This document shows, piece after piece, positions 23,214-64,000 of a stretch of DNA of 64,000 bases. The position numbers and the translations under genes are program-made. This DNA comes from Paragordius varius. Taxonomy: Eukaryota > Animalia > Nematomorpha. The notes under the pieces were generated by a model. It was not told the DNA's origin. It made no database searches and worked only from the letters and a program-made list of their open reading frames with translations. Numbering within the stretch: the first letter of the stretch is position 1; each line of letters opens with the position of its first letter. The stretch spans positions 9,920,001-9,984,000 of the forward strand of contig OZ176050.1 of NCBI GenBank assembly GCA_964247055.1. The letters run 5' to 3'.

Positions 23214-24405
23214 TTACCCTTGATGATATTTTTTGTCAATGTTTTTGGCCACATAATAATGATAAGGATATTGTCGTCCACGTTTATGTATGCGTCGATT
23301 TCGTGAAAAGTAATGCTTCAATTGTTTGCGAAATTTTGGATTTAAAAAACAGTAGGAGATTGGATTACAACAAGCAGACACGTAACTGATGAGATGTATA
23401 ACGGAAATAAGGGTGGAACCGCGGAGTCGGTCTAATAACGTCGTAGGACTGTGCACGTACCATGTTGTAATGATGTACAACGGTGTCCAACATATAAAAA
23501 ATTCGAGTACCACAATGCATAACATTCCAATGATACGCCTTTTAACCTGAAAACTACGGAGGGCCGCACTCTCACTCGCATATCTTCGGACCACAGTGAT
23601 TGGAGATGCTTCTTCTTTCCCAGCTAAATTGGTTACAATGATTGCATTATTAATATTATTTTTGGGTATATTGTTGTTGGTTGCTGTTGTACTAATCGAT
23701 CCTCGATAATTAAAGGTGTGCTAGGGGAAAAAATGTAAGCAATTATGTTGAGTTTAAAAAACTTTAAATGGTGTAAGCATGTGCAAACATTCAAAAATTT
23801 ACGATAGATAAAATTAACTTAGTACATAAATTTGAACAATTATGGTGATTGATGGAAAGAGGATGTCCTAACTGTATTAAATGAACCGGTTAAATTAGAC
23901 GCACACAAAATCTAATAAGCGATAAATTAAAAAAACATCGAAAATTTATATTTTTTGGAACCAATTAATTACGTTTTATTCACCTGAAAATTGTAATACG
24001 TGCGGTTAAAGTTAGATAATCAATTTTAGCGGTTGTTTTGTATTTAATTTTTGTTAAATCCGAAGCTTAACTCATTTTTACATTGGGTATCAGCACTTAA
24101 GGTTACTATATAAATCGATAAATCATGATAAAAAATGTGTAAGTTTTTAAAAATATATATTTAAATAGATCACAATATCCATGCGATTTATATTTTTTTT
24201 AAAACTGATGTACTATATTTAACCACGGAAATGTTATTTTTCTACCATAAAAAATTTTATTATTATTTTTTCAATTATTTATTTTTAATTAATTTTAATG
24301 TCTCCAAGCAAATAATACCATCTATACAATATGTATACTGTGTTGGTAGGAGTATTATTATTTCTACGCAGTTGGAATTTCATATTTAATTAAGAATTCA
24401 AAGAA

Positions 24406-24468
<63 letters not shown>

Positions 24469-27400
24469 AGTCTACAATTTCACTTCAAACAAAAATTTTA
24501 ACCATATTACTATTTTTATTTTACACCACAGAGTTTAAAGTTATATACAACACACACTCTCACAATTTTAAATTATATAATTACTTTATTTGGTGATTCC
24601 TCCATAGTGACATTCTTTGTCACAACAGAAAAAAGTGTATTTTTATTCCAAGATATAGATGGTTTGCTTAACACGTAACTTGGCAAGAGTATGGTGGAAC
24701 GCCTTTTAGCTTTTGTATTTATTTGAGGTGCAATCGATTTTAAGCGTTCTTCTCTGACCAAAGGTCTTGTACAAGATTGAGATCTTTTAACTTTTCGGCA
24801 TGTTAAATCATGCCCCACCAATATTTTGTCAATTGGCGGGGTATTTTGTCGTTTTTTTAACTTGAACTGAGGTGTCTTAATACTAGAAACGTCTGTTTTT
24901 GCTATCGAGGTCGACGTTGTAGTTTTGAAAGAACTAAATAAGGAGAACCGTTGTTTAACAAACGAACCCAAAAACGAGTTACGGAAGGACGAATTATAGC
25001 TATTTTTGTGATTTATAATTGTAATGGTAGGGGATGATGATGTTATGAGATTGCTAGGTTTATTCAAATAATTTAACCAACATTGTGAAACATGGCCCAA
25101 TTTATACCAAAAACTTTCGGAAGATGGTATGTTTGATGATGATGTCAATTTTTTCCTTCTGGATAAATAAGAATAATGCGTTGGTGTGGAAGGAGAAGAT
25201 TTGAATAGGGTAGCAGATTCAGGTCCTAGAAATCATAAAATGATATTTTAAACAATTAGTATAACGCATTTATCTAAAACAGGGGTGCCCAACAAAAATT
25301 TGCGGCTGCCGAATTTCAGACCAAAAATTTTTGACGGGCCGCATTTAAAACATACATGGGCATTAATAAATATTTTATCAAATTCCAACATAAAACTGTG
25401 CAAAAAATACTATAAAAACTATGTATTTCACCAATTTTGAAATTCCTTCCCAATACATGGAAAGACTTATTAAATTTTGAATTGAGAATTATTCTTTTTT
25501 TTGGCAAATTTTAATATTTTTCGTGGGCCGCGCAAATATCATGGAGGGATTCATGTTAAACACCCTTGGTTATAAACACACACATTATTTTTCTTTTTTT
25601 AGAACAAAGGGATCCATAAAGTATTAACATAGTTTATCGTCAATTTTCGGGCAAAAAAAATCAATTAGTTTTCATTTCAAACATTTTTATGGTTTAAAAT
25701 ATAACATCTTATCTTTTTTATAATTTTTATGACGCCTGGGGTGAATTCTAATTTCAGACAAACAACAATATGTGGTAGCATATATGGAATGTATAAATTT
25801 AAGAATCAAAAATAAGGGGCCGAAATCAATATATGAATAAAGAGTCTGAGTCAACCATTTATTTAACACATGAAATTTTTTATTAAATATCTTTATCGTA
25901 ATTTGTATAAAAATATTTTAATCGTTTTTTTGCTAATACCTAACTATAAACATTATTTTATCTTAAAAGTTTTTCCTCCTCTTTCCTATTTTGCATTTAT
26001 ATGTTAATGCAATTCGAAGTTAATTTAATGTAAAATTATCAATTTATATTAGTGGTTATCAAACTACGGCCCTAAAAATGCTTCTTTATGGCCCTGAAAT
26101 ACTTATTTAATTTTTTTCGTAATTTATATAAATATCTTCAAAAGTATCAAATAGCAATATACTAGTATTTATCGGTATTACAGCCCTTGAGAAAATAAAA
26201 ATATATATTTTGGCCCTTTGAAATTTTTTGGTGAGTACTACGTATCTATATTGTTTTATGGGAGAATTAAAATTAAAAAAAATTGGCGGCAAAAGCTTTG
26301 AGATAAAGGTTTTTTTAATTTTACATAAATATTTTTTGAAACACACTTAATGGCCATTGAATGTATATTTTTGGAATAAAAACCTAACTTTGTCTTTCGT
26401 AACATAGAATTGCTTTGGATAAAATATATCATCTACCTTAAATGTATTTAAACGTTTAATATAGGATATACCATCTCTTTGATTCTGTTTTTCACGTTTG
26501 ATAGCTCTTAACAGGACAATACTTATTTTGGTGTAAGTGAAAATCATAATCACTAGCGGAGTAATAAGAAGTGCAAAATTAAGGAACCAAGTGTACATTA
26601 ATTCTTGCCTCGGTTTTTGCCATAACTCTCTACAAGCATAAGTAAGGGTACTTTTTGTTGAAAGAAAAGAATTGCGATTATCATTTATGTTTGTTATTAG
26701 TTGTTTGGGCGAATTTTGCAGTGTAGCATGTATTGTAGTAAGGTTATTAGTATTGTTATTATAAATATAATTATATTTAGTTTCAAGCTTGGTATAAGTG
26801 CCGCCATATCCAATTTGTTTAAGATCACTGACTAAAATGATGGGAAAAGTTATGCAAAACGCATTGATCCAAATGATAATGAGCGTATTTAGCGAGTGTT
26901 TAATAGTTTGCCATCGACGAGAATAAAATGGTTTGCAAATGGCAAAATATCGTTCCAATGAAATTGTAACTAGTGTCCATACACTCAAAGCAACCGAAAA
27001 AGCTAAAGGTTAACAATGGAAATTGATTTAAAAGTTTCAAAAAAAAATTAACACTACAAAATAATAAAACAGCAATAATAATTAGTCGGCAATTTATTTA
27101 AAAATTAAACAAAAATTAAATAGTTACTGAAAACGAGACTTTAAATTTTTACATTCATTGCTGTAAAATAAAACTTAATCTTCATTTTATTCAAAAAAAT
27201 GGACCAATGCCTTTTCAAACTATATACCTTGAAATATTGAAATTCAGGAAATGTATACCTTGTAAAAAAGGGATAATTTTGCACAACACTCGCCCAAAAA
27301 TAAAATTTTTCAAAATGTGTCCAATCAATGTGAATGGTATACACATGATAGCTAAAATTAAATCGCTAACAGCCAAATTGATTAAATAAATATTCGTAAT

Positions 27401-27526
27401 GGTATAAGTTGATCGCCGGCGTGATAAAACCAATATAACTAATATATTTCCAATCAATGATAAAACAAAAATCACGATATAACCGATGATTATAACCAAG
27501 GATCGAATATCAATGATAAAATTCAT
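23214..27526 (-). CDS. Cholecystokinin/sulfakinin-type neuropeptide GPCR; 4 exons, exact C-terminus uncertain
   Basis: Exons 27259-27526, 26472-27002, 24585-25225, 23214-23720 join in frame. Motifs GNILV, TNIYLINLAVSDL..CIPFTL, CKIIPFLQ, SVWTLVTISLERYFAICKP, KRRIIGML..FFICWTPLY and ISYVSACCNPISYCFLNPKFR. Confidence 0.88.
24408..24465. repeat. (TA)n microsatellite
   Basis: Perfect dinucleotide run in GPCR intron 3. Similar runs occur near 2553, 11250, 30985, 35472 and 53622. Confidence 0.95.
25280..25568. mobile_element. Degenerate hAT-type MITE
   Basis: CAGGGGTG...CACCCTTG termini with internal GGGCCGC motifs, in GPCR intron 2. TSD not conserved. Confidence 0.5.
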
Positions 27527-27877: not shown

Positions 27878-29425
27878 TCACGGATGAGAAGCATCAACCT
27901 GAGAACCTTGCAATTTTTGCCACTGAGCTTGAGCAAGCCAAGCCTTCAATTGACTCTTATCTACATTGCGGTCCGCTAACCAAGCTTGAACTTTAGAAAC
28001 CAAAGTTGGATCCAATAAATTGGCGGGTTGATATGGGCCTTGTGTGTTTGGATACAAGGGAGGAGGTTGTACAGATGGTCCAGGATAAGTCGTTTGCGGT
28101 CCAACTGGTATATATCGCTGATCAACTACACTACCCGATGGGAATGGGGGATAAGTTGGATCGGTTTGAGGAGGCAAATACGCACTAGTTGGGCGATTAG
28201 GCTGCAAGCTGCCATATCCAACATTCGGGATTGGTTGTCTGGGCGTTGGTAAAACTTTACCAACTTGTGATAAATCAAGGTGTGTTGGACCTTGATTCAC
28301 AGTGACAGGGATGTTTGGATTCAAAAATGGTGGAACATTGGGACCAGTTTGAAAACCTGTTGTCACAGTATCAATCGTATTGGCCGAACGCGGAAAAGGT
28401 TGTTGAGAGGCAAACCCTGGTGGTCCCCCAAACGGTGGCTGCGATATATCACCAGCATTGCTTATAATCGATGGTTGAGGCGGGAAAGGGGATTTAGAGA
28501 AATCAGCATTTGGTGGATAGCCATTAAATGATTCTAACGGCGTTACAACAGAAGTACCAGTCACAACTTGAGATATCGTTGGATGTGTATCTGGTGAGCC
28601 TGGGAGCTCAGTAATAACTGGTGGTGTTTCATAAGCTTGACCAACGACCTTGTTTGTCACTAGGTTGGGAAATGCAATCGGCTGGTACCATTTAACAATG
28701 TAATCACGAGGTAGCAAATTCAAACCCAACTGTTGTTCGGTTATAGGGACATACCTTGTGTTAGTAAGTGAATACTGTTTGGGTACATCGGTGATTGTCG
28801 TAACCGGAGTTTGAATTATGTTAAATCGAACACCGGTGCCTGTATAAGTTTTTGGTACCAATTGATAGTCCTGCACATACTTTTCAACCAACGTATTGGT
28901 GACACCGGTTTTAAGTTCTTCGTGTGGAACATATTGCACATCATAACCGGTTACAGACTTGGGTTTATAAATGATTTGTTGCTCTTCTCTGGTCTGAGGA
29001 ACAAGAGAATATTCAGTAGTTTGATATGATTTTGGTTTTAAAGTTAATTGTTTGATTATTTGACTAACAGGAACTTGTTTGGTTTTGACAACATTTTCAA
29101 CGTTTGGGATATATTTCACGGTTTGAACTTGATTCACTTGCGGGATACTAGCAACACCTTGAAAATTTAAGGTTCCGGGAACGTAATTAATTGTGGGAAC
29201 ATTCTGGACAGTTGGTTGAACACCCAGTGTTTTGTAATAATATTCTACAGGTTTTTCGACATAGCCATGAATGTGAGCCACTGAATCACTATACGTTTGA
29301 TCATTGTAGGGTATGATAGGAGACACAGGGTATATGGGGCCGTTTGAAGGCAAATTTTTAAAATCTGGCAAATTTTGAGCCCACAAAAAACTACTTAGTA
29401 AAGTATACAAAAAATATTGAAACAT
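27878..29425 (-). CDS. Intronless, probably secreted Pro/Val/Gln/Tyr-rich structural protein (515 aa) with 12-residue repeats, articulin/platein-like
   Basis: Single 1548-nt ORF, GC-richer than its flanks. Hydrophobic N-terminus MFQYFLYTLLSSFLWA. Pro occurs at 14 of 16 consecutive 12-residue positions (59-239). The C-terminal half is Pro-rich. Confidence 0.8.
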   Translation of the reverse strand: MFQYFLYTLLSSFLWAQNLPDFKNLPSNGPIYPVSPIIPYNDQTYSDSVAHIHGYVEKPVEYYYKTLGVQPTVQNVPTINYVPGTLNFQGVASIPQVNQVQTVKYIPNVENVVKTKQVPVSQIIKQLTLKPKSYQTTEYSLVPQTREEQQIIYKPKSVTGYDVQYVPHEELKTGVTNTLVEKYVQDYQLVPKTYTGTGVRFNIIQTPVTTITDVPKQYSLTNTRYVPITEQQLGLNLLPRDYIVKWYQPIAFPNLVTNKVVGQAYETPPVITELPGSPDTHPTISQVVTGTSVVTPLESFNGYPPNADFSKSPFPPQPSIISNAGDISQPPFGGPPGFASQQPFPRSANTIDTVTTGFQTGPNVPPFLNPNIPVTVNQGPTHLDLSQVGKVLPTPRQPIPNVGYGSLQPNRPTSAYLPPQTDPTYPPFPSGSVVDQRYIPVGPQTTYPGPSVQPPPLYPNTQGPYQPANLLDPTLVSKVQAWLADRNVDKSQLKAWLAQAQWQKLQGSQVDASHP

Positions 29426-34167: not shown

Positions 34168-34774
34168 ATGCCTTTAATGAAAGGGCCGGCGCCCATAAGA
34201 CACACGCTCAAATACCTGGAAGCTGGTTCATTATATCTTAAAAACTTTGTAAAAATAATGATAATACATCACAATGATCCCGAGAAAGATCCAAATAAAT
34301 TTTGTACTGGCATATCGTAACCTATTTCTTTAATGATTTTAGGCAAATGATATTTTGGGACTTACCTCAAATACAATATAAAAATCCAAAAGTTCAAATT
34401 ATGCAAATTAAAAATATGACACCTACACCCTTTATATTATTTTATTTTGGTATATGATTTTTTCATTAAAATTAGATGATAAACAGAAAATGTATATGGA
34501 TATATTTAACAAAACACGTTCGGAAATTATGGATTTCATAAGAAATAACATCGCGAAAACGACGGAAGAATTGAAAGAAGAACGTGAAAAATCACGCAAA
34601 ATATTGAATCCTGCAAATTTTGGCACAGATTACGATAGAGAATGCATTTCATTAATTCCTGGCCAAGTTTTTAATTATTCTCTTCACCAACTCCCAGACA
34701 GAATGCGTGGAAAAATGATTCACCCAGAAGGCCGCTCCAAAAAACCTTCACGAGCCGTGTGGGCTATTCAGTGA
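34168..34774 (+). CDS. MRPS25: Mitochondrial ribosomal protein S25, 184 aa; 3 exons
   Basis: Exons 34168-34316, 34343-34449, 34476-34774 (555 nt, open). Motifs [51 protein letters not shown]...GQV and MRGK. Both introns are 26 nt. Confidence 0.94.
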
Positions 34775-53902: not shown

Positions 53903-56900
53903 CTAACGAAAGCGGGCAGGTTTCTGCCGACTTCTTGTCGGGTACCGTCGTTCTTGTGTTTTAGCGGGGGAGTAGATTGTCTCAGGTTTCTGGGTATTAT
54001 CATTATTTGGACTTTCGGCTGTCGGAGTAATTGGTTCGATTTCGTCCCTTGAATTGATCGTGTTTGGTTGCGTTTCAGCGATTGTTCCATCATCCGTGAC
54101 TGTGTTTACCTTCTCCTCATTTGTGTTGCTGGCAGTGGTCGGCTGTGGTTGTTTTACTATTTGGTCAGCGTGTTTCCTCACAACTTTGTCTCGGTCCTTG
54201 TCCCATACCTTGTATGAAAATAACCCTGTACGGTGCGTAATCTCTCTGGCGCGCCACCCTGGACTTAATTCATTTTTAATCATTACCTGGTCATTAATGG
54301 CAAACTGCCGTCGGGGGGTCGGTGCATCTAACAATCTCTCCCTACTATTTAACCAGGTTAAGGGCGTATGGGGGGTACGCTTGAACATTAACTGGGCCGG
54401 GGTTTCTTTCGTTGTTGAGTGTATAGAAATTCTATACGCCCATAGTCTAGTGTTAAACGCTTCGTGGGTGGATATCCCATTATTTTTTATTCTTGTGTAT
54501 TTATTTTTTATTGTACCTACTAACCTTTCTACCATCCCATTACTCTTAGGGTGGTATGGGGTAACCTTAATATGTTTAACCCCTAACGTACTTGACGTAA
54601 AGTACTCATTACTGAAATACGAAGCGTTATCGCTCACGATCTCTCTTGCAAAGCCAAACCTTGCAAACGTTTCTTCCAATTTGTGGATTATTTTCGCTGC
54701 GGTTACCTTTTTCAAAATAAATCCTTCTGCCCATTTCGAGGCACTATCAATTATCAACAACCAATACAAACCGTCTACCGTTCCGGCTATATCAATATGC
54801 AAACGCTCCCACACAGCAACATTATGATCCCACTGATACGTGGAATTCTGAGTAACATTCGGCCTACTACGTTGGCACGATTCGCATTGACTACTGGCTT
54901 TTACCAGGTCATTTTCTAATTCTGGCCAATAACACGTAAATCTGGCCATCGCTTTCATGGTCTCTACGTTGTTATGCCCGCTGTGTAGGTATCTCACCAC
55001 CTCTTTTTGGAGGAGCTTCGGAATTACTATCCGATCATTTAAACTTAATAATCCATATTGATATGCCAACTCGTCTTTACGGTTAACAAACTTTTCTAAT
55101 TCTGGAGAACTCCAGTCATGGTTGTTTAACGCTTTAATTACTTTTTATAATACTGAATCTAATGCGGTTTCTTTTCGAATTTCATCTCTGCTTAACCGCA
55201 CGTTATGACAATTCAAAAATCTCAAATATCTGGTAACTGCATGATCTTCATCATAGGCAACGATCTCGTCAATCGGCCATCTCGATAAATAATCAGCTCT
55301 ATTTTGAGCCCCTTATGACTTATTTCAAAGTCGTATTCATTTATCATATTAATCCACCTTAGTATTTTAGCATTATGTATCACTTTTAAATTTCGATCTC
55401 TATTTATTAACTTTACTAAAGGTAAATGGTCAGTTAATATTATAAATTTTCTACCATATATGAAACTATGAAACTTTCGTAACGCAAATAATATTGCTTT
55501 TAATTCCTTCTCTATAGTGGAATAATTTCTTTCAGCGTTGCTACACTTTTGTGAGGCATACGCTATCGGTAACCTTTCACTATTGATGACTTAAAATACA
55601 CCCGAATCCTAAATCTGACGCATCAGTTTCTATTATCAATTTCCTATTCGGATTATATGGTGTTAAAAACACTTTTTCGCTTAACAAATTCTTAGCTGCT
55701 ACCCAGCTTTTCTCATGTTTCTCGGTCCAACACCATCTCGTATTTTTACTAGTTAATTCATGTAAGGGACCGACTATCATTTGTAATTTTGGTATAAAGC
55801 GTTCATGAAATGTCAAAAAAGCTAAAAAACTACGTAACGACTTTTTATCCACCGGCCTTTTTAGTTCCTTAATTGCTTTGATTTTGCTTTCACACGGGCT
55901 TATATCCTTTTTCGATATTACAAACCCTAAATAGTTTACTGATTCTGCGCCTATCATTATTTTATCTTGTCTTAATTTAAATCCGGCCTTATCGAGACGA
56001 CTTAATACGTTATTTAAATTGTTAATGTGCACATTTTCCGTCCTACCAGTCACTAGGACGTCATCTAAATATACGCAAGTTCCCGGACTTTCAGCCAGCA
56101 ATTGTTCCATCACTCTTTGGAAGATGATAGGTGCCGTGGCCAGTCCAAACGGCATGCGTTTGTATCTAAAAAAACCTTTATGTGTTTAGATAGTTAACAA
56201 TTCTTGACACTCCTCTGTCACTGGCATCTGGAGGTAAGCATCTTTTAAATCAATTTTCGTGAATGTGATACCTTCACCTATTTTCGACACCAACTCATCA
56301 AACGTGGGGATTATGTGGGAGTCTTCTTGCAACCACTTATTAATAGTTACCCGAAAATCACTACATATTCTTAATTCGCTATTCTGTTTAAGTACATTGA
56401 CCGTAGGCGTGGCCCATGTCACAGGTGTGGTGTTAGGATCAACCGGTTCTAAAATGCCTAACTTTTCTAGCCTCGTCAGCTCTTTCTCCACCTTTTCTCT
56501 TAATGGAAAAGGCACCCTGCGACATTTCGGGATCGCATTCGCTGCAATGCGAATTTTTACAGGGTCCTTATAGCACCCTAACTTATTTTCGAATAAATTT
56601 TTAAAATTTTCACAAATATCATTCAATTTAAGATAATTAACTTTAACCTGTGGCATCTCAATCTGTTTCGCCATCCAGTCCAGTCCACAGATTAGCGGGG
56701 CCATCTTTTGCTTAGGCATAAGTCCCCGACTATTTGTTTACCATTTACTTGGACCTTGACACTTGCTGTCCCCATCATTGGCACTGTGGTATTGTTGTAC
56801 GATTTTACTGGGGGTGTCGGACGCAGCTTGGGTTTACCGATTTGCTCCCATGTGGCAAAGTTTATTACACTAATGTCCGAACCGAGATAAAGTCTTTTTT

Positions 56901-57780
56901 TAACCCGTTTATTACTAGTGTTATCAATAAGGGAGTTAGCGCCTTATGACCCACGTTAACTTCCTTTAATAATTGCCTATTGAAGTTGGGTCTTTGTCTT
57001 TTGGCCACACACATTCTCGCAAAATGGTTTAGCTTTCCGCATTTGTTGCAGGATCGTCTCCAGGCTGGATACTTGTTGGGTGGGTGTGTGGTGCCGCAAT
57101 ATTTACATGTGGTAGGTTTTATTATTGTTTGTCCATTGGATTTATTATGTTGTAACCGATTGATATTATTATTGCTGTTACTGTATCGAATGCTATTGAT
57201 ATTACTATTATTGTTATTCTGTAATCCAGCCTTAGCAGACATGTAGTGCGAGATCTACGATTGTTTCTAGTGGAACAGGAATACCGTTTATCAAAGCATC
57301 TGGATACCTGGAATGGATATCCATCTCTAGTTGAGGCTGTCGCAGTCCTATTACGAATGCATCACGAATACGTTGTTCTATGGCTTCAGTAAATTGAGCT
57401 TCTTCAGCTCCTATCTTGACACGCTCAAGAAATTGGGTAAAACTTTCACCCTCGTTGCGTACCAGCCTATAAAATTCAAGACTTTGGAATTTTGATTTTG
57501 TCGGATTGAATATTTTTTTGCCTGTTTCCGTGATCTCCGCCCATGTGGCGTCTTTTATTTTCTTGGAATAAAGGTGTTGGTTAATCTTTCTTACTATCAT
57601 GAATCCGCCATATGCTAGTATCGTTGATTTAAGCGTTCTTTCGGTTACTGGAATATCCTTTGCCTCGAGTACGTTGCTAATATACTCGAGGTACTCTTCA
57701 AATTTATTATTATCGTTATATTTTTCTATGGCCGCAATACTAGTATGAGGAGCTGTGGTGTTCATTGGTTCGTCAGCCAT
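53903..57780 (-). pseudogene. Gypsy gag-pol, broken by frameshifts and stops
   Basis: Gag with CxxC..H and CNKCGKLNHFARMC knuckles; protease with the D-T-G Asp apparently deleted (..GSDISVI); RT WATPTV/LRICSDFR/KIDLKDAYLQ/MPFGL/YLDDVL; RNase H ETDASDLG; integrase HSGH..CESCQ, WERLHID, IVSDN, PYHPKSNGMVER. Confidence 0.9.
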
Positions 57781-57792
57781 TTTGGCCACCAA

Positions 57793-59674: not shown

Positions 59675-60075
59675 CAGGGCTTCTTAAACTATGGGGCCCC
59701 ACCCAATTTGGGGTCGCGAGTGATAAAAATTCAATCTAACAAAAAATGCTTTTTAACTTGTAAAATTATTGTTATAAACAAAAATAACAATCATCTTAGA
59801 TAATTATATCAGAATTAAGACGGTCAAAATCCACTTTCGTTTTTGAAACTAAAATAAAAACATTTCTATATCATTTTGTGCAAATTTCAATTTTAGATTT
59901 TTATATGAAACGAATTCTAAATTTATATATTTTCATGTGCATATGTATATTGTTACCTAATAAATATATATTCAAAAAATGTTAATTTATTTTTCTTTTA
60001 TATTTGTTGGGGCCGTTAAGAAACTTGCAATCATAAATGGGGTCGGGAATTACAACAAAAGTTCAAGAAGCCCTG
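59675..60075. mobile_element. hAT (Charlie-like) MITE
   Basis: TIR CAGGGCTTCTTAAACT / AGTTCAAGAAGCCCTG with internal GGGGTCGCG motifs. TSD degenerate. Confidence 0.7.
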
Positions 60076-60249
60076 GTCTGAACAATGATAACTAATTAGA
60101 ACTGACCGACTTTAGAATCAATCCCAAAAAACGGGAATGGTAGCATTATTTTGTGAAAAACAATGATTTACAATACCATAACCCAAAAAATGATATCGAA
60201 TATAAAATAATGAAGTGAAAAATTTTAAAATATAATTCTTTTATTAAAA

Positions 60250-60890
60250 TTAATAAATTTCATCTGATATAACATCGATCTCAGCTTCTGAAATACTTTT
60301 ATTAATTGAATTTTTCCGCCGTTCTAAAGCGATTTTTCTGTTAAATTCAATTTTTTGTTTAATTTCATCATCGATTGATTTTTCAGGGACCCTTTCTGTT
60401 TCTAGCGATGTAATTTCATCAAAATCAGTAGAAAGTGGAGTTGAAGTGTTATATTCTGTGAGTATTTGGGAAATAGCATTCTTATATATGACATTCTAAT
60501 ATACTTTTATATCCTTTTTCTGGCCTAAAGTTTCGATTTTCTCTATAACATCATTAAATGAATATTTTGGAAACAAACGAAATGACCAATACTCATAAAG
60601 CCCAATAATCTTATTTATGTCTTTAAGCTGAATATATAATCATTCAAACCTCATAACCTTTGCCCTTTAATTTAACTTTGGAAAAAAGGCCTGGTATAGT
60701 TTTTAAACCATTGTTTCCCAGTAATCTAATATATAAAACGACAAACTTTTCAGAATTGAGTTTTTGTCTTTCTCTGACAATTTTATTATTTTCGTTCCAA
60801 CTTTCTTCAAGCGATAACTGATTTAATTGTGTTTTATCTATTTCTTTTATAAAAATTACTTTTGGTGGTATTTTCAAATTCGAAATCCAT
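60250..60890 (-). CDS. TIPIN: TIPIN/Swi3/Csm3 replication-fork protection protein, 183 aa; 5 exons
   Basis: Exons 60860-60890, 60747-60837, 60650-60725, 60505-60627, 60250-60480 (552 nt, open). Swi3 domain RQKLNSEKLLGNNGL...KVKLKGKGYELKDI..IIGLYEYWSFRLFPKYSFNDVIEKIETLGQKKDIK. Introns are 22, 21, 22 and 24 nt. Confidence 0.92.
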
Positions 60891-60921
60891 TATAAAACAG
60901 ATGCTTTACATAGTTTGGTAA
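60891..60921. promoter_or_regulatory. 31-nt spacer between the divergent start codons of TIPIN and NDUFA12
   Basis: ATGs at 60888-60890 (-) and 60922-60924 (+). Confidence 0.6.
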
Positions 60922-62046
60922 ATGCGAAGCTTGATCAAAATTTATTTCGACAAATATAAACGTTTGGTTGATATATTTAAATTTAATGGGGGTATAAAAC
61001 AATCTTTTTTGCAATTATATTAGTAATGTTAATTTTAAAATTTTAGTACCGATGATTTGAAAGTAGGCCGACTTATTGGTGAAGATAACCTGGGAAATAA
61101 ATATTACGAAGATAATTCATATTTTTTCGGTTATATTTTATATTTAAAAAATATTTAGCTGTACATTATGCTTTACATTTATTCATATAGGGAGGAATAG
61201 ATGGGTGGTATACAACCGTAAAGTTGGCTTAGATTATGATGCAAGTCAAGTTGAACCAGGATGGTTTATTTTGCTTTTAATTATATTTATTTTATATCAA
61301 TATATTGCCAAATTTTTTTATATCATGCAATAAAAATTTATATTCGGGACAGGGATTACGGTTAATATTTGTGATTAGGGTTTTGCTCAAAAATAATTTT
61401 GGGCACGTTTTTTTCTCCCAAAATTTTAAAAATGTTTGTGGTAAAAAATTTGAAATCTTACTAAATTATATTTGTTATAAATAGATTGGTATTATTTTTT
61501 ACAAAATTAGCTATTAACAAATTAAGCACTTAGGACTGTTTAGATTAAAATAATGTCAAAAATTTTTACGATACATTTTTTTAAAAATAACCTAAAATTC
61601 AAATCTATTGTCCCTATATTTAAACGATTATTCGAATGCCGTAACTTTTTCTAGTTTTAGTTCCCAATCAATTTTTTTCTTTTATTTATAAAAAAGAAGG
61701 CACCAAATAAAATTGCGATTTTATGCAATATTAATTAAGGTTGGCCTGGCGCAGTCAACCCTTTAACCGTAATTTAATAACTTTATAAGGTTAATAAGTG
61801 TATTCCCTATTATTTTTAATATATTTAATAATGTGCTCATTTCCGCCATGAATCCATTTTTATAGGCATGCCTGGTTGCATAACATTACGGATGATATCC
61901 CAAACAGTAAAAAACTCATGTATGAATGGATGGAGCCTTATAAACCAAATCAATCAGGAACATTTGAAAAATATGTTCCTTATAGCACAACGCCTCAAAA
62001 AATAACTCCCTGGAAACCAGATAATTTTGTAAAAACACGTGTTTAA
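60922..62046 (+). CDS. NDUFA12: NADH dehydrogenase (ubiquinone) 1 alpha subcomplex subunit 12, 145 aa; 4 exons
   Basis: Exons 60922-61022, 61047-61129, 61191-61263, 61866-62046 (438 nt, open). Motifs [50 protein letters not shown] and YVPYSTT..KI.PWKP. Introns are 24, 61 and 602 nt. Confidence 0.95.
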
Positions 62047-63009: not shown

Positions 63010-63904
63010 TTAAAATTGGTACCATTTTTTATCTTTGTATTTAAGCATAATATCGTGGGCCGTTTTAGAATAATTTTCTGATTGAGCTAACATTTGGGCT
63101 GTTCGTTCATCCAAATGACCAAGTTTTTCTCCTCTTTCACCCAAAGCCTATTATTGAAGTATGGTACCATACAATTCAATAAATTGATTAAATATTATCA
63201 AAATTATAATATATTTTTAGGAATTTTATAATAAAAAACAGGTAAAATCACATTAATTTCAAAACTAATATAGAATTATATAATAAATCCGCAACATACT
63301 GACTATATAAAAATAAGGACCGTGTGCATAAAGTAATATCGGATGTCTTTATGAAATGGTTCACTTGTAAATTTTAAAAAAAATATAAAGCAATTTAAAT
63401 GATTAAATTGGTATAAAATACCCAATTTTTCACATTATTAAATTTACATAATTCAATTCTTTGTAAAAGACCAATTTTAGCCCATCTACTTTACTATTAG
63501 GCACACATTTTTATAAATTAAAAATTATTTTACCAATCTAGCTTTTTGAACTGGTCCAGATGCGGTTGCTTGCGCCTTCAAATTTGCATCTTTCAACAAA
63601 ACGGCTGCTGATCTTTGGGCTTTTCCTGCCCCAGCCTCCCCAACTATCAAATAAATGAATAAAGTAAAAAATAAAGTATAGATAATAAACTTTTTATGTT
63701 TTATCTAATTTAAAACCCTATTTTCGTTCAAAACTAATTAAAAACAGGATTAACATAAAATATGGATATAAATACTTACATAATTCCTCTCTATCAATCG
63801 ATGTATTACGTGATGAAAATAGAGTGGCAAAAAAGCTGGTTTTTGGTGGTTCTGGGGTCTCCATAAATTTGTAAATTTTACATTGCATATCAGGTAGGTG
63901 TTTG
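63010..63904 (-). CDS. STXBP5: Tomosyn / syntaxin-binding protein 5, last three exons (gene continues beyond the window)
   Basis: Exons 63780-63904, 63534-63643, 63010-63147: ETPEPPKTSFFATLF...DREELFGE, ARLALGERGEKLGHLDERTAQML...AHDIMLKYKDKKWYQF*. Confidence 0.93.
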
Positions 63905-63941
63905 CTATGTAGGAGAAATATTGACTTACATTTAAAATATA

Positions 63942-64000
63942 CAGTCATGTATCCTTTATTTTATCAAAAATTTAATTTTTTTTCTTTAAATGGGTATAAA
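63942..64000. mobile_element. Second copy of the 36748 MITE family, cut by the window edge
   Basis: TA|CAGTCATGTATCCTTTATTTTATCAAAAATTTA, identical to the right TIR of 36748-36966. Confidence 0.75.

What the first reader, a model, noticed from the sequence alone, without database searches (positions are those of the whole stretch)
60250..60890. TIPIN gene in which all four introns are 21-24 nt
The four introns are gtaatttttataaaagaaatag (22), gtttgtcgttttatatattag (21), gtttgaatgattatatattcag (22) and gtatattagaatgtcatatataag (24). Removing them turns a region with only a 77-aa ORF into a complete 183-aa Swi3-domain protein. The 21-nt intron is in frame with no stop, but retaining it inserts 7 residues into the KLNSEK-LLG stretch that is ungapped in TIPIN orthologs as I recall them. 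The 24-nt intron has an in-frame TAG. This is the cleanest test case: 641 nt of genomic DNA should give a 552-nt CDS.
Basis: partly seen in the sequence, partly recalled or inferred. Interest (0 to 1): 0.82.

Follow-up and report, generated by a model that had tools for sequence, protein, structure and literature searches.

The report
Four tiny introns in hairworm TIPIN
An ordinary DNA-replication gene (TIPIN) of an animal that is most likely a horsehair worm is split by four very probably real introns of only 21-24 bases, a size published for just two other animal groups, but I found no RNA data to show the cutting directly.

Summary
Confirmed at DNA level. The minus-strand gene 60890-60250 has four GT-AG introns of 22, 21, 22 and 24 nt; without them the exons give 552 nt, a 183-aa TIPIN/Swi3 protein, the only Swi3 match in the genome. 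The hairworm Gordionus has introns of 40-43 nt at the same four codons and phases; turtle and frog share introns 2-4 exactly (exons of 76 and 123 nt). An aligner with no length preference picks the exact ends of introns 2-4. So these are ancestral introns that shrank. No RNA run covered the locus: splicing is inferred. In 15 other genes of this genome, 18 of 36 introns within 400 nt of the start codon are 23-36 nt, against 0 of 85 further down; none is 37-54 nt; the A-rich branch-like patch sits at -7 to -11 in tiny introns and -20 to -28 in long ones. Known before: myxobolids and Dicyema (PMC13644364). This would be a third animal lineage, with tiny introns limited to gene starts. The scan already noted this class on other DNA of this genome (SAMM50, SNRNP27, PDCD6); TIPIN is one more clean test case.

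The parts
60860..60890 (-). TIPIN exon 1 (31 nt, starts at ATG 60890)
   Evidence: only usable ATG upstream in frame; Gordionus exon 1 also ends in phase 1
60838..60859 (-). intron 1, 22 nt, GT-AG, phase 1 (alternative in-frame acceptor at 60844 would give 16 nt)
   Evidence: Gordionus has 40 nt at the equivalent codon
60747..60837 (-). TIPIN exon 2 (91 nt; Gordionus 94, turtle 94, frog 100)
60726..60746 (-). intron 2, 21 nt, GT-AG, phase 2, in frame and stop-free
   Evidence: chosen by 68 of 111 homologues with exact ends; 40 nt in Gordionus, 3773 in turtle, 307 in frog
60650..60725 (-). TIPIN exon 3 (76 nt; same length in Gordionus, turtle, frog); Swi3 profile 7-31
60628..60649 (-). intron 3, 22 nt, GT-AG, phase 0
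   Evidence: chosen by 105 of 111 homologues; 43 nt in Gordionus, 12098 in turtle, 131 in frog
60505..60627 (-). TIPIN exon 4 (123 nt; same length in Gordionus, turtle, frog); Swi3 profile 33-72, 48 bits
60481..60504 (-). intron 4, 24 nt, GT-AG, phase 0, in-frame TAG
   Evidence: chosen by 34 of 111 homologues; 42 nt in Gordionus, 49 in a beetle, 7968 in turtle, 812 in frog
60250..60480 (-). TIPIN exon 5 (231 nt to stop) with the C-terminal helix motif shared with other TIPINs; the fifth Gordionus intron (48 nt) has no counterpart
60240..60245 (-). AATAAA polyadenylation-like signal 4 nt after the stop
   Evidence: function inferred

Best explanation
This is the intact, single TIPIN (Swi3/Csm3) gene of a horsehair-worm-like animal. 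Its four segments of 21-24 nt are ancestral spliceosomal introns that shrank by deletion, to about half the length they have in Gordionus, and are removed from the pre-mRNA by the major (U2-type) spliceosome working across the intron. Shown: gene identity, GT-AG ends, ancestral positions and phases, canonical U1, U2 and U6. Inferred: the branch A lies about 8-10 nt from the 3' end, leaving only about 11-15 nt from donor to branch, so the polypyrimidine tract and the extended U2 and U6 helices of the human spliceosome cannot form in full. All four are tiny because in this genome introns within about 400 nt of the start codon often belong to the tiny class, and all TIPIN introns lie there (31, 144, 241, 386 nt from ATG). 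The simplest cause of that position effect is deletion bias and selection near gene starts, with transposon-driven growth further down; this step is inference.
For: Frame restoration; Pfam and human TIPIN colinearity across intron 3, profile 7-31 then 33-72; single Swi3 locus; same positions and phases in Gordionus, turtle, frog, beetle; length-neutral spliced alignment of 111 homologues; other haplotypes differ at 13 of about 700 nt with no gap inside the gene against 4-9% plus gaps in flanks, and a 3-nt deletion allele at 60251 keeps the stop in frame; canonical snRNA motifs; same class in CCT and proteasome alpha genes, 5' restriction p = 7e-12; A at -7..-11 in 63/130 tiny against 110/420 long positions, p = 4e-6.
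Against: No RNA evidence at this locus. Branch points are inferred from 26 introns in a 73% AT genome. Intron 1 lies in a poorly conserved region, no homologue's local alignment crossed it, and it has a second in-frame acceptor. The hairworm placement rests on a narrow best hit (48.7 against 47.1 bits), shared gene structure, and two blank cilia-family searches without positive control.
Confidence: 0.9

Rival explanations
1. Introns 1, 3 and 4 are spliced, but the stop-free 21-nt intron 2 is mostly retained and the protein carries a 7-residue insertion; or intron 1 uses the upstream acceptor (16 nt).
For: Both keep the frame. Intron 2 is the only stop-free one of nine 3n tiny introns found. 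Short introns in microsporidia and Paramecium are spliced less well (PMC13644364, PMC12862383).
Against: Intron 2 keeps GT and AG at the ancestral position; no homologue has an 11-residue spacer. The 22-nt form of intron 1 matches the Gordionus junction and nothing under 21 nt occurred in 26 tiny introns.
Confidence: 0.07
2. The gene is a decaying pseudogene or carries assembly indels, and the GT-AG pairs are chance.
For: No transcript seen; AT-rich DNA has many GT and AG.
Against: Only Swi3 locus in the genome; four breaks at four ancestral intron positions; contigs of other samples have the same segments without gaps and lower divergence than flanks.
Confidence: 0.015
3. The segments are removed by something other than the spliceosome: programmed DNA elimination in the soma, tRNA-type endonuclease splicing or ribosomal bypass.
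For: Donor-to-branch distance is far below the roughly 50 nt needed by the human spliceosome (PMC6692369).
Against: Invariant GT-AG at spliceosomal positions, branch-like A patch, no joined form among the listed joints of the three DNA-like runs (four joints were not shown); equally short spliceosomal introns are established in ciliates and myxobolids.
Confidence: 0.015

Closest known systems
Ultra-short introns of myxobolid myxozoans (Thelohanellus kitauei, Myxobolus rasmusseni, median 22 bp; Henneguya salminicola, 27 bp) - PMC13644364
   Same: Length, GT-AG ends, donor reduced to GT plus A or T, weak A patch upstream of AG, canonical U2, ancestral positions, parasitic animal.
   Different: Cnidarian against a probable ecdysozoan. 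There the tiny class sets the genome median; here it is 18 of 121 introns, confined to gene starts, beside introns of hundreds to thousands of nt, with a gap at 37-54 nt. The paper's main text reports short neighbours of short introns but no 5' restriction.
Dicyemid introns (Dicyema sp., median 27 bp, two thirds under 30 bp) - PMC6543705
   Same: Shrunken introns in a conserved exon-intron structure in a parasitic bilaterian.
   Different: Majority class in dicyemids; minority, position-dependent class here; different phylum.
Tiny introns of ciliates (Paramecium bursaria median 24 nt; Stentor 15-16 nt) - PMC12862383, PMC13644364
   Same: U2-type splicing of 21-24-nt introns is experimentally established there.
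   Different: Protists in which nearly all introns are tiny. The bias against stop-free 3n introns known from Paramecium (my recollection) is only hinted at here: 8 of 9 with stop against 6.0 expected, P = 0.09.
TIPIN gene of Gordionus sp. m RMFG-2023 (CAK9296609.1, GCA_954871325.2)
   Same: Best hit of exon 4; same four intron positions and phases; exons 3 and 4 of equal length; similar donors of introns 3 and 4.
   Different: Introns of 40, 40, 43, 42 and a fifth of 48 nt, a size range that is empty in my sample of this genome; protein 243 aa against 183.

Membership tests
TIPIN / Swi3 / Csm3 | Swi3 domain PF07962 above the curated cut-off | tested here: met
   exon 4 alone 48 bits against cut-off 25; exon 3 covers profile 7-31
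TIPIN / Swi3 / Csm3 | C-terminal helical motif shared by animal TIPINs | tested here: met
   exon 5 matches Gordionus 214-238 at 48% and several other homologues
TIPIN / Swi3 / Csm3 | binds TIMELESS at the replication fork | not testable with these tools
   inferred from family only
U2-type spliceosomal intron | GT-AG ends whose removal restores the frame | tested here: met
U2-type spliceosomal intron | position and phase shared with proven introns of orthologues | tested here: met
   introns 2-4 exact in Gordionus, turtle, frog; intron 1 exact in Gordionus, same phase in vertebrates
U2-type spliceosomal intron | branch-point adenosine | tested here: inconclusive
   A enriched at -7..-11 across 26 tiny introns; the branch base of each TIPIN intron is not determined
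U2-type spliceosomal intron | U1, U2, U6 snRNAs with canonical pairing motifs in the genome | tested here: met
   RED also present
U2-type spliceosomal intron | absent from mature mRNA | tested here: inconclusive
   the one RNA-like run laid (X6) gave no contig on the stretch
Myxobolid/dicyemid-type ultra-short animal introns | length under 30 nt with reduced donor and no clear pyrimidine tract | tested here: met
   21-24 nt; position +3 is A or T in 26 of 26, no conserved +4 to +6
Myxobolid/dicyemid-type ultra-short animal introns | tiny introns are the bulk of the genome's introns (median under 30) | tested here: not met
   84 of 121 introns in 15 conserved genes exceed 110 nt; 18 are 36 nt or less. 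Works like them, but is a separate case
Nematomorpha (source organism) | closest relatives are hairworms | tested here: inconclusive
   best hit among 1.84 billion representatives is Gordionus, by a small margin; no tree was built; genome size 110.6 Mb matches none of the three hairworm sizes in PMC11603191 (201, 288, 288 Mb)
Nematomorpha (source organism) | loss of cilia genes (cited in PMC12690905) | tested here: inconclusive
   B9-C2 and IFT57 not found, no positive control

The most novel reading that the evidence does not exclude
This hairworm runs two assembly routes of one major spliceosome side by side: a conventional route (introns of 55 nt or more, branch at -20 to -28) and a compact route (21-36 nt, branch at -7 to -11, donor-to-branch distance 11-25 nt) that works only near the transcript start, for instance with help from the cap-binding complex or early-elongation polymerase. 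TIPIN would be an mRNA made wholly by the compact route.
Probability: 0.3. Interest if true: 0.85.

Novelty: new variant of a known kind. Interest (0 to 1): 0.63.

Why it matters
A 2026 survey of 51 animal genomes found introns under 30 nt only in myxobolids and Dicyema (PMC13644364). A hairworm would be a third, independent lineage and the first where such introns are a minority class tied to gene starts beside ordinary long introns. The human spliceosome needs about 50 nt from donor to branch (PMC6692369); here the whole intron is 21-24 nt, and a relative has 40-43 nt at the same sites, so the shrinkage can be followed within one phylum. TIPIN is a 641-nt, single-copy gene for a one-tube RT-PCR or minigene test. 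Practically, gene finders with a 30-40-nt minimum would break the 5' ends of many genes in this genome. The TIPIN protein itself is ordinary.

Tried and rejected
Word search with exon 4 found no candidate (length filter excludes full-length kin), so the big representative search was used once. Word search with Gordionus TIPIN found no further hairworm or transcript-derived copy; with an MRPS25-like ORF nothing. A homology-free count of donor-acceptor distances over 200 kb showed no peak (too little sequence). No listed run was on record as RNA holder; X3 and X4 cover intergenic DNA evenly and behave as DNA; X6 laid nothing even at 80% likeness. Alignment A2 of separate exons was meaningless and not used. 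HSP60 was left out of the statistics for poor profile fit; its apparent 22-nt intron is doubtful. Three paper searches on hairworm intron size found nothing relevant; the supplement of PMC13644364 is not held, so I do not know if a hairworm was among its 51 genomes. The joined coding model was built only inside local scripts to check frame and stops; it was not sent to any search tool, and all searches were exon by exon by reference.

Full report
Observation. The gene lies on the minus strand, ATG at 60890, stop ending at 60250. Exons are 31, 91, 76, 123 and 231 nt, 552 in all, one open frame of 183 aa. Unspliced, the longest ORF is 77 aa. Retaining intron 1, 3 or 4 stops the product at 18, 67 or 109 aa; retaining intron 2 gives 190 aa; an AATAAA follows the stop by 4 nt. 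The joined model was used only in these local checks; every database search was done exon by exon by reference.

Gene identity. Exon 3 matches Pfam Swi3 positions 7-31 and exon 4 positions 33-72 (48 bits, cut-off 25). Human TIPIN in the PDB matches at 70-96 and 98-136. It is the only Swi3 match in the 110.6-Mb, 44-contig genome. Exon 5 holds the C-terminal motif of other TIPINs.

The introns are ancestral. The best relative of exon 4 among 1.84 billion representatives is TIPIN of the hairworm Gordionus. Its gene has introns of 40, 40, 43, 42 and 48 nt; the first four have phases 1, 2, 0, 0 at the same codons as here, with exons 3 and 4 again 76 and 123 nt. Turtle and frog TIPIN have introns 2-4 at the same codons (131 to 12098 nt) and a phase-1 intron before an exon of 94-100 nt; a beetle keeps intron 4 at 49 nt. 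The natural ORF that reads through intron 2 aligns to Gordionus with a gap of exactly 7 residues, and the spacer there is 4 residues in 48 of 52 homologues, never 11. Intron 1 was not crossed by any local alignment and has an in-frame alternative acceptor (16 nt); the Gordionus junction favours 22.

Not an artefact or a dead copy. Contigs of runs X1, X3 and X4 cross the introns without gaps. The X4 haplotype differs at 7 of 373 and 6 of 329 nt in the gene, against 28 of 310, 35 of 810, 14 of 379 and 14 of 298 plus gaps outside. A 3-nt deletion allele at 60251 in all three runs drops the last residue and keeps the stop in frame. The RNA-like run X6 laid nothing, so splicing is not shown.

Genome context. 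I aligned profiles to eight CCT genes (whole) and seven proteasome alpha genes (first 1.5 kb) of the same genome. Of 121 introns, 18 are 23-36 nt, none is 37-54 nt, 19 are 55-109 nt and 84 are longer. All 18 start within 400 nt of the start codon (18 of 36, against 0 of 85 beyond; Fisher p = 7e-12); the median length is 28-30 nt in the first 300 nt and about 410 nt beyond 450 nt. TIPIN's introns start 31, 144, 241 and 386 nt after its ATG, which accounts for all four being tiny. They are at the short end of the class (three shortest of 26; p = 0.003, but the gene was picked for this). The limit is not absolute: a 22-nt GT-AG segment in the window's transposase (18739-18718, minus) lies over 500 nt into its coding region (not checked against homologues).

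Mechanism. U1 5' end, U2 branch-pairing sequence and U6 ACAGAGA box are canonical, and RED is present, so the major spliceosome is the likely actor. In 26 tiny introns A is enriched at -7 to -11 (63/130, against 110/420 in long introns, p = 4e-6), while long introns have their A excess at -20 to -28 (p = 5e-8). If these patches mark the branch, TIPIN's introns have 11-15 nt from donor to branch, against about 50 nt required in human extract (PMC6692369). Recognition must then be across the intron, with little or no pyrimidine tract and shortened U2 and U6 helices; this is inference. The empty 37-54-nt range and the shift in branch position suggest two geometries rather than a continuum. Why the compact one is near gene starts is open: mutation and selection bias near promoters (my preferred reading, about 0.6, helped by the transposase exception) or dependence on the cap or early elongation (about 0.3). 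Eight of nine 3n tiny introns carry an in-frame stop, TIPIN intron 2 being the exception; shuffles give 6.0, P = 0.09, so no claim.

Organism. Probably a hairworm: best hit and shared gene structure with Gordionus, similar GC (25% against 27%), B9-C2 and IFT57 not found (cilia loss in hairworms is cited in PMC12690905). The margin of the best hit is small and no tree was built; I put it at about 0.85.

What is known. PMC13644364 reports introns under 30 nt in myxobolids (median 22-27) and Dicyema only, and predicts further groups; PMC6543705 gives a dicyemid median of 27. I found no paper on hairworm intron size in the library (most subscription journals are not searched). Earlier notes of this scan describe the same class in other genes of this genome; they gave me the hairworm and 5' leads, which I tested, and are not counted as support.

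Verdict. Real feature, about 0.9 that all four are spliced as drawn. New variant of a known kind: a probable third animal lineage, with a position-restricted minority class. Interest 0.63, held down by the lack of RNA evidence and by precedent for the size itself.

Noticed in passing
window 60891-60921: Only 31 nt separate the TIPIN ATG (60890, minus) from the NDUFA12 ATG (60922, plus); the 5' leaders must be very short or overlap the other gene. Gordionus has no called gene in the 8 kb upstream of TIPIN.
   Followed up: partly
window 60922-62046 (+): NDUFA12 (Pfam PF05071) has introns of 24, 61 and about 602 nt at 101, 208 and 342 nt from ATG: the same rise in length with distance.
   Followed up: yes
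window 18739-18718 (-): 22-nt GT-AG segment joining two ORFs of a DNA transposase, more than 500 nt into the coding region; a possible exception to the 5' restriction.
   Followed up: partly
window 33992-33971 (-): Apparent 22-nt GC-AG intron near the start of a DUF1907 (C11orf54-like) gene, head to head with an MRPS25-like gene (my recollection of the family) that also seems to have short introns near 34318 and 34451.
   Followed up: no
window 59676-60069 and 63813-64000: Very high contig depth: abundant repeats, one just downstream of TIPIN with inverted-strand joints at 59690/60049, MITE-like.
   Followed up: no
G000 C3:257000-527000, C2:11.95-11.99 Mb, C6:565000-633000: U2 (46 matches) and U1 (17 matches) occur in clusters of divergent copies, several near contig ends, while U6 has only two identical copies. 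Variant snRNAs could matter for two intron classes.
   Followed up: no
window 53903-57792 (-): Ty3/gypsy-like LTR retroelement with gag, RT, RNase H and integrase pieces in separate frames; observed only.
   Followed up: no
window 27878-29425 (-): Intronless 515-aa proline- and valine-rich ORF with a signal-like start and no Pfam match, next to a CCK/sulfakinin-receptor-like GPCR (23214-27526).
   Followed up: no
L045:14357-16250 (Gordionus VPS35 3' end): The last two visible exons are about 1.7 kb apart, hinting that Gordionus too has long downstream introns beside its 40-nt class; one case only.
   Followed up: partly
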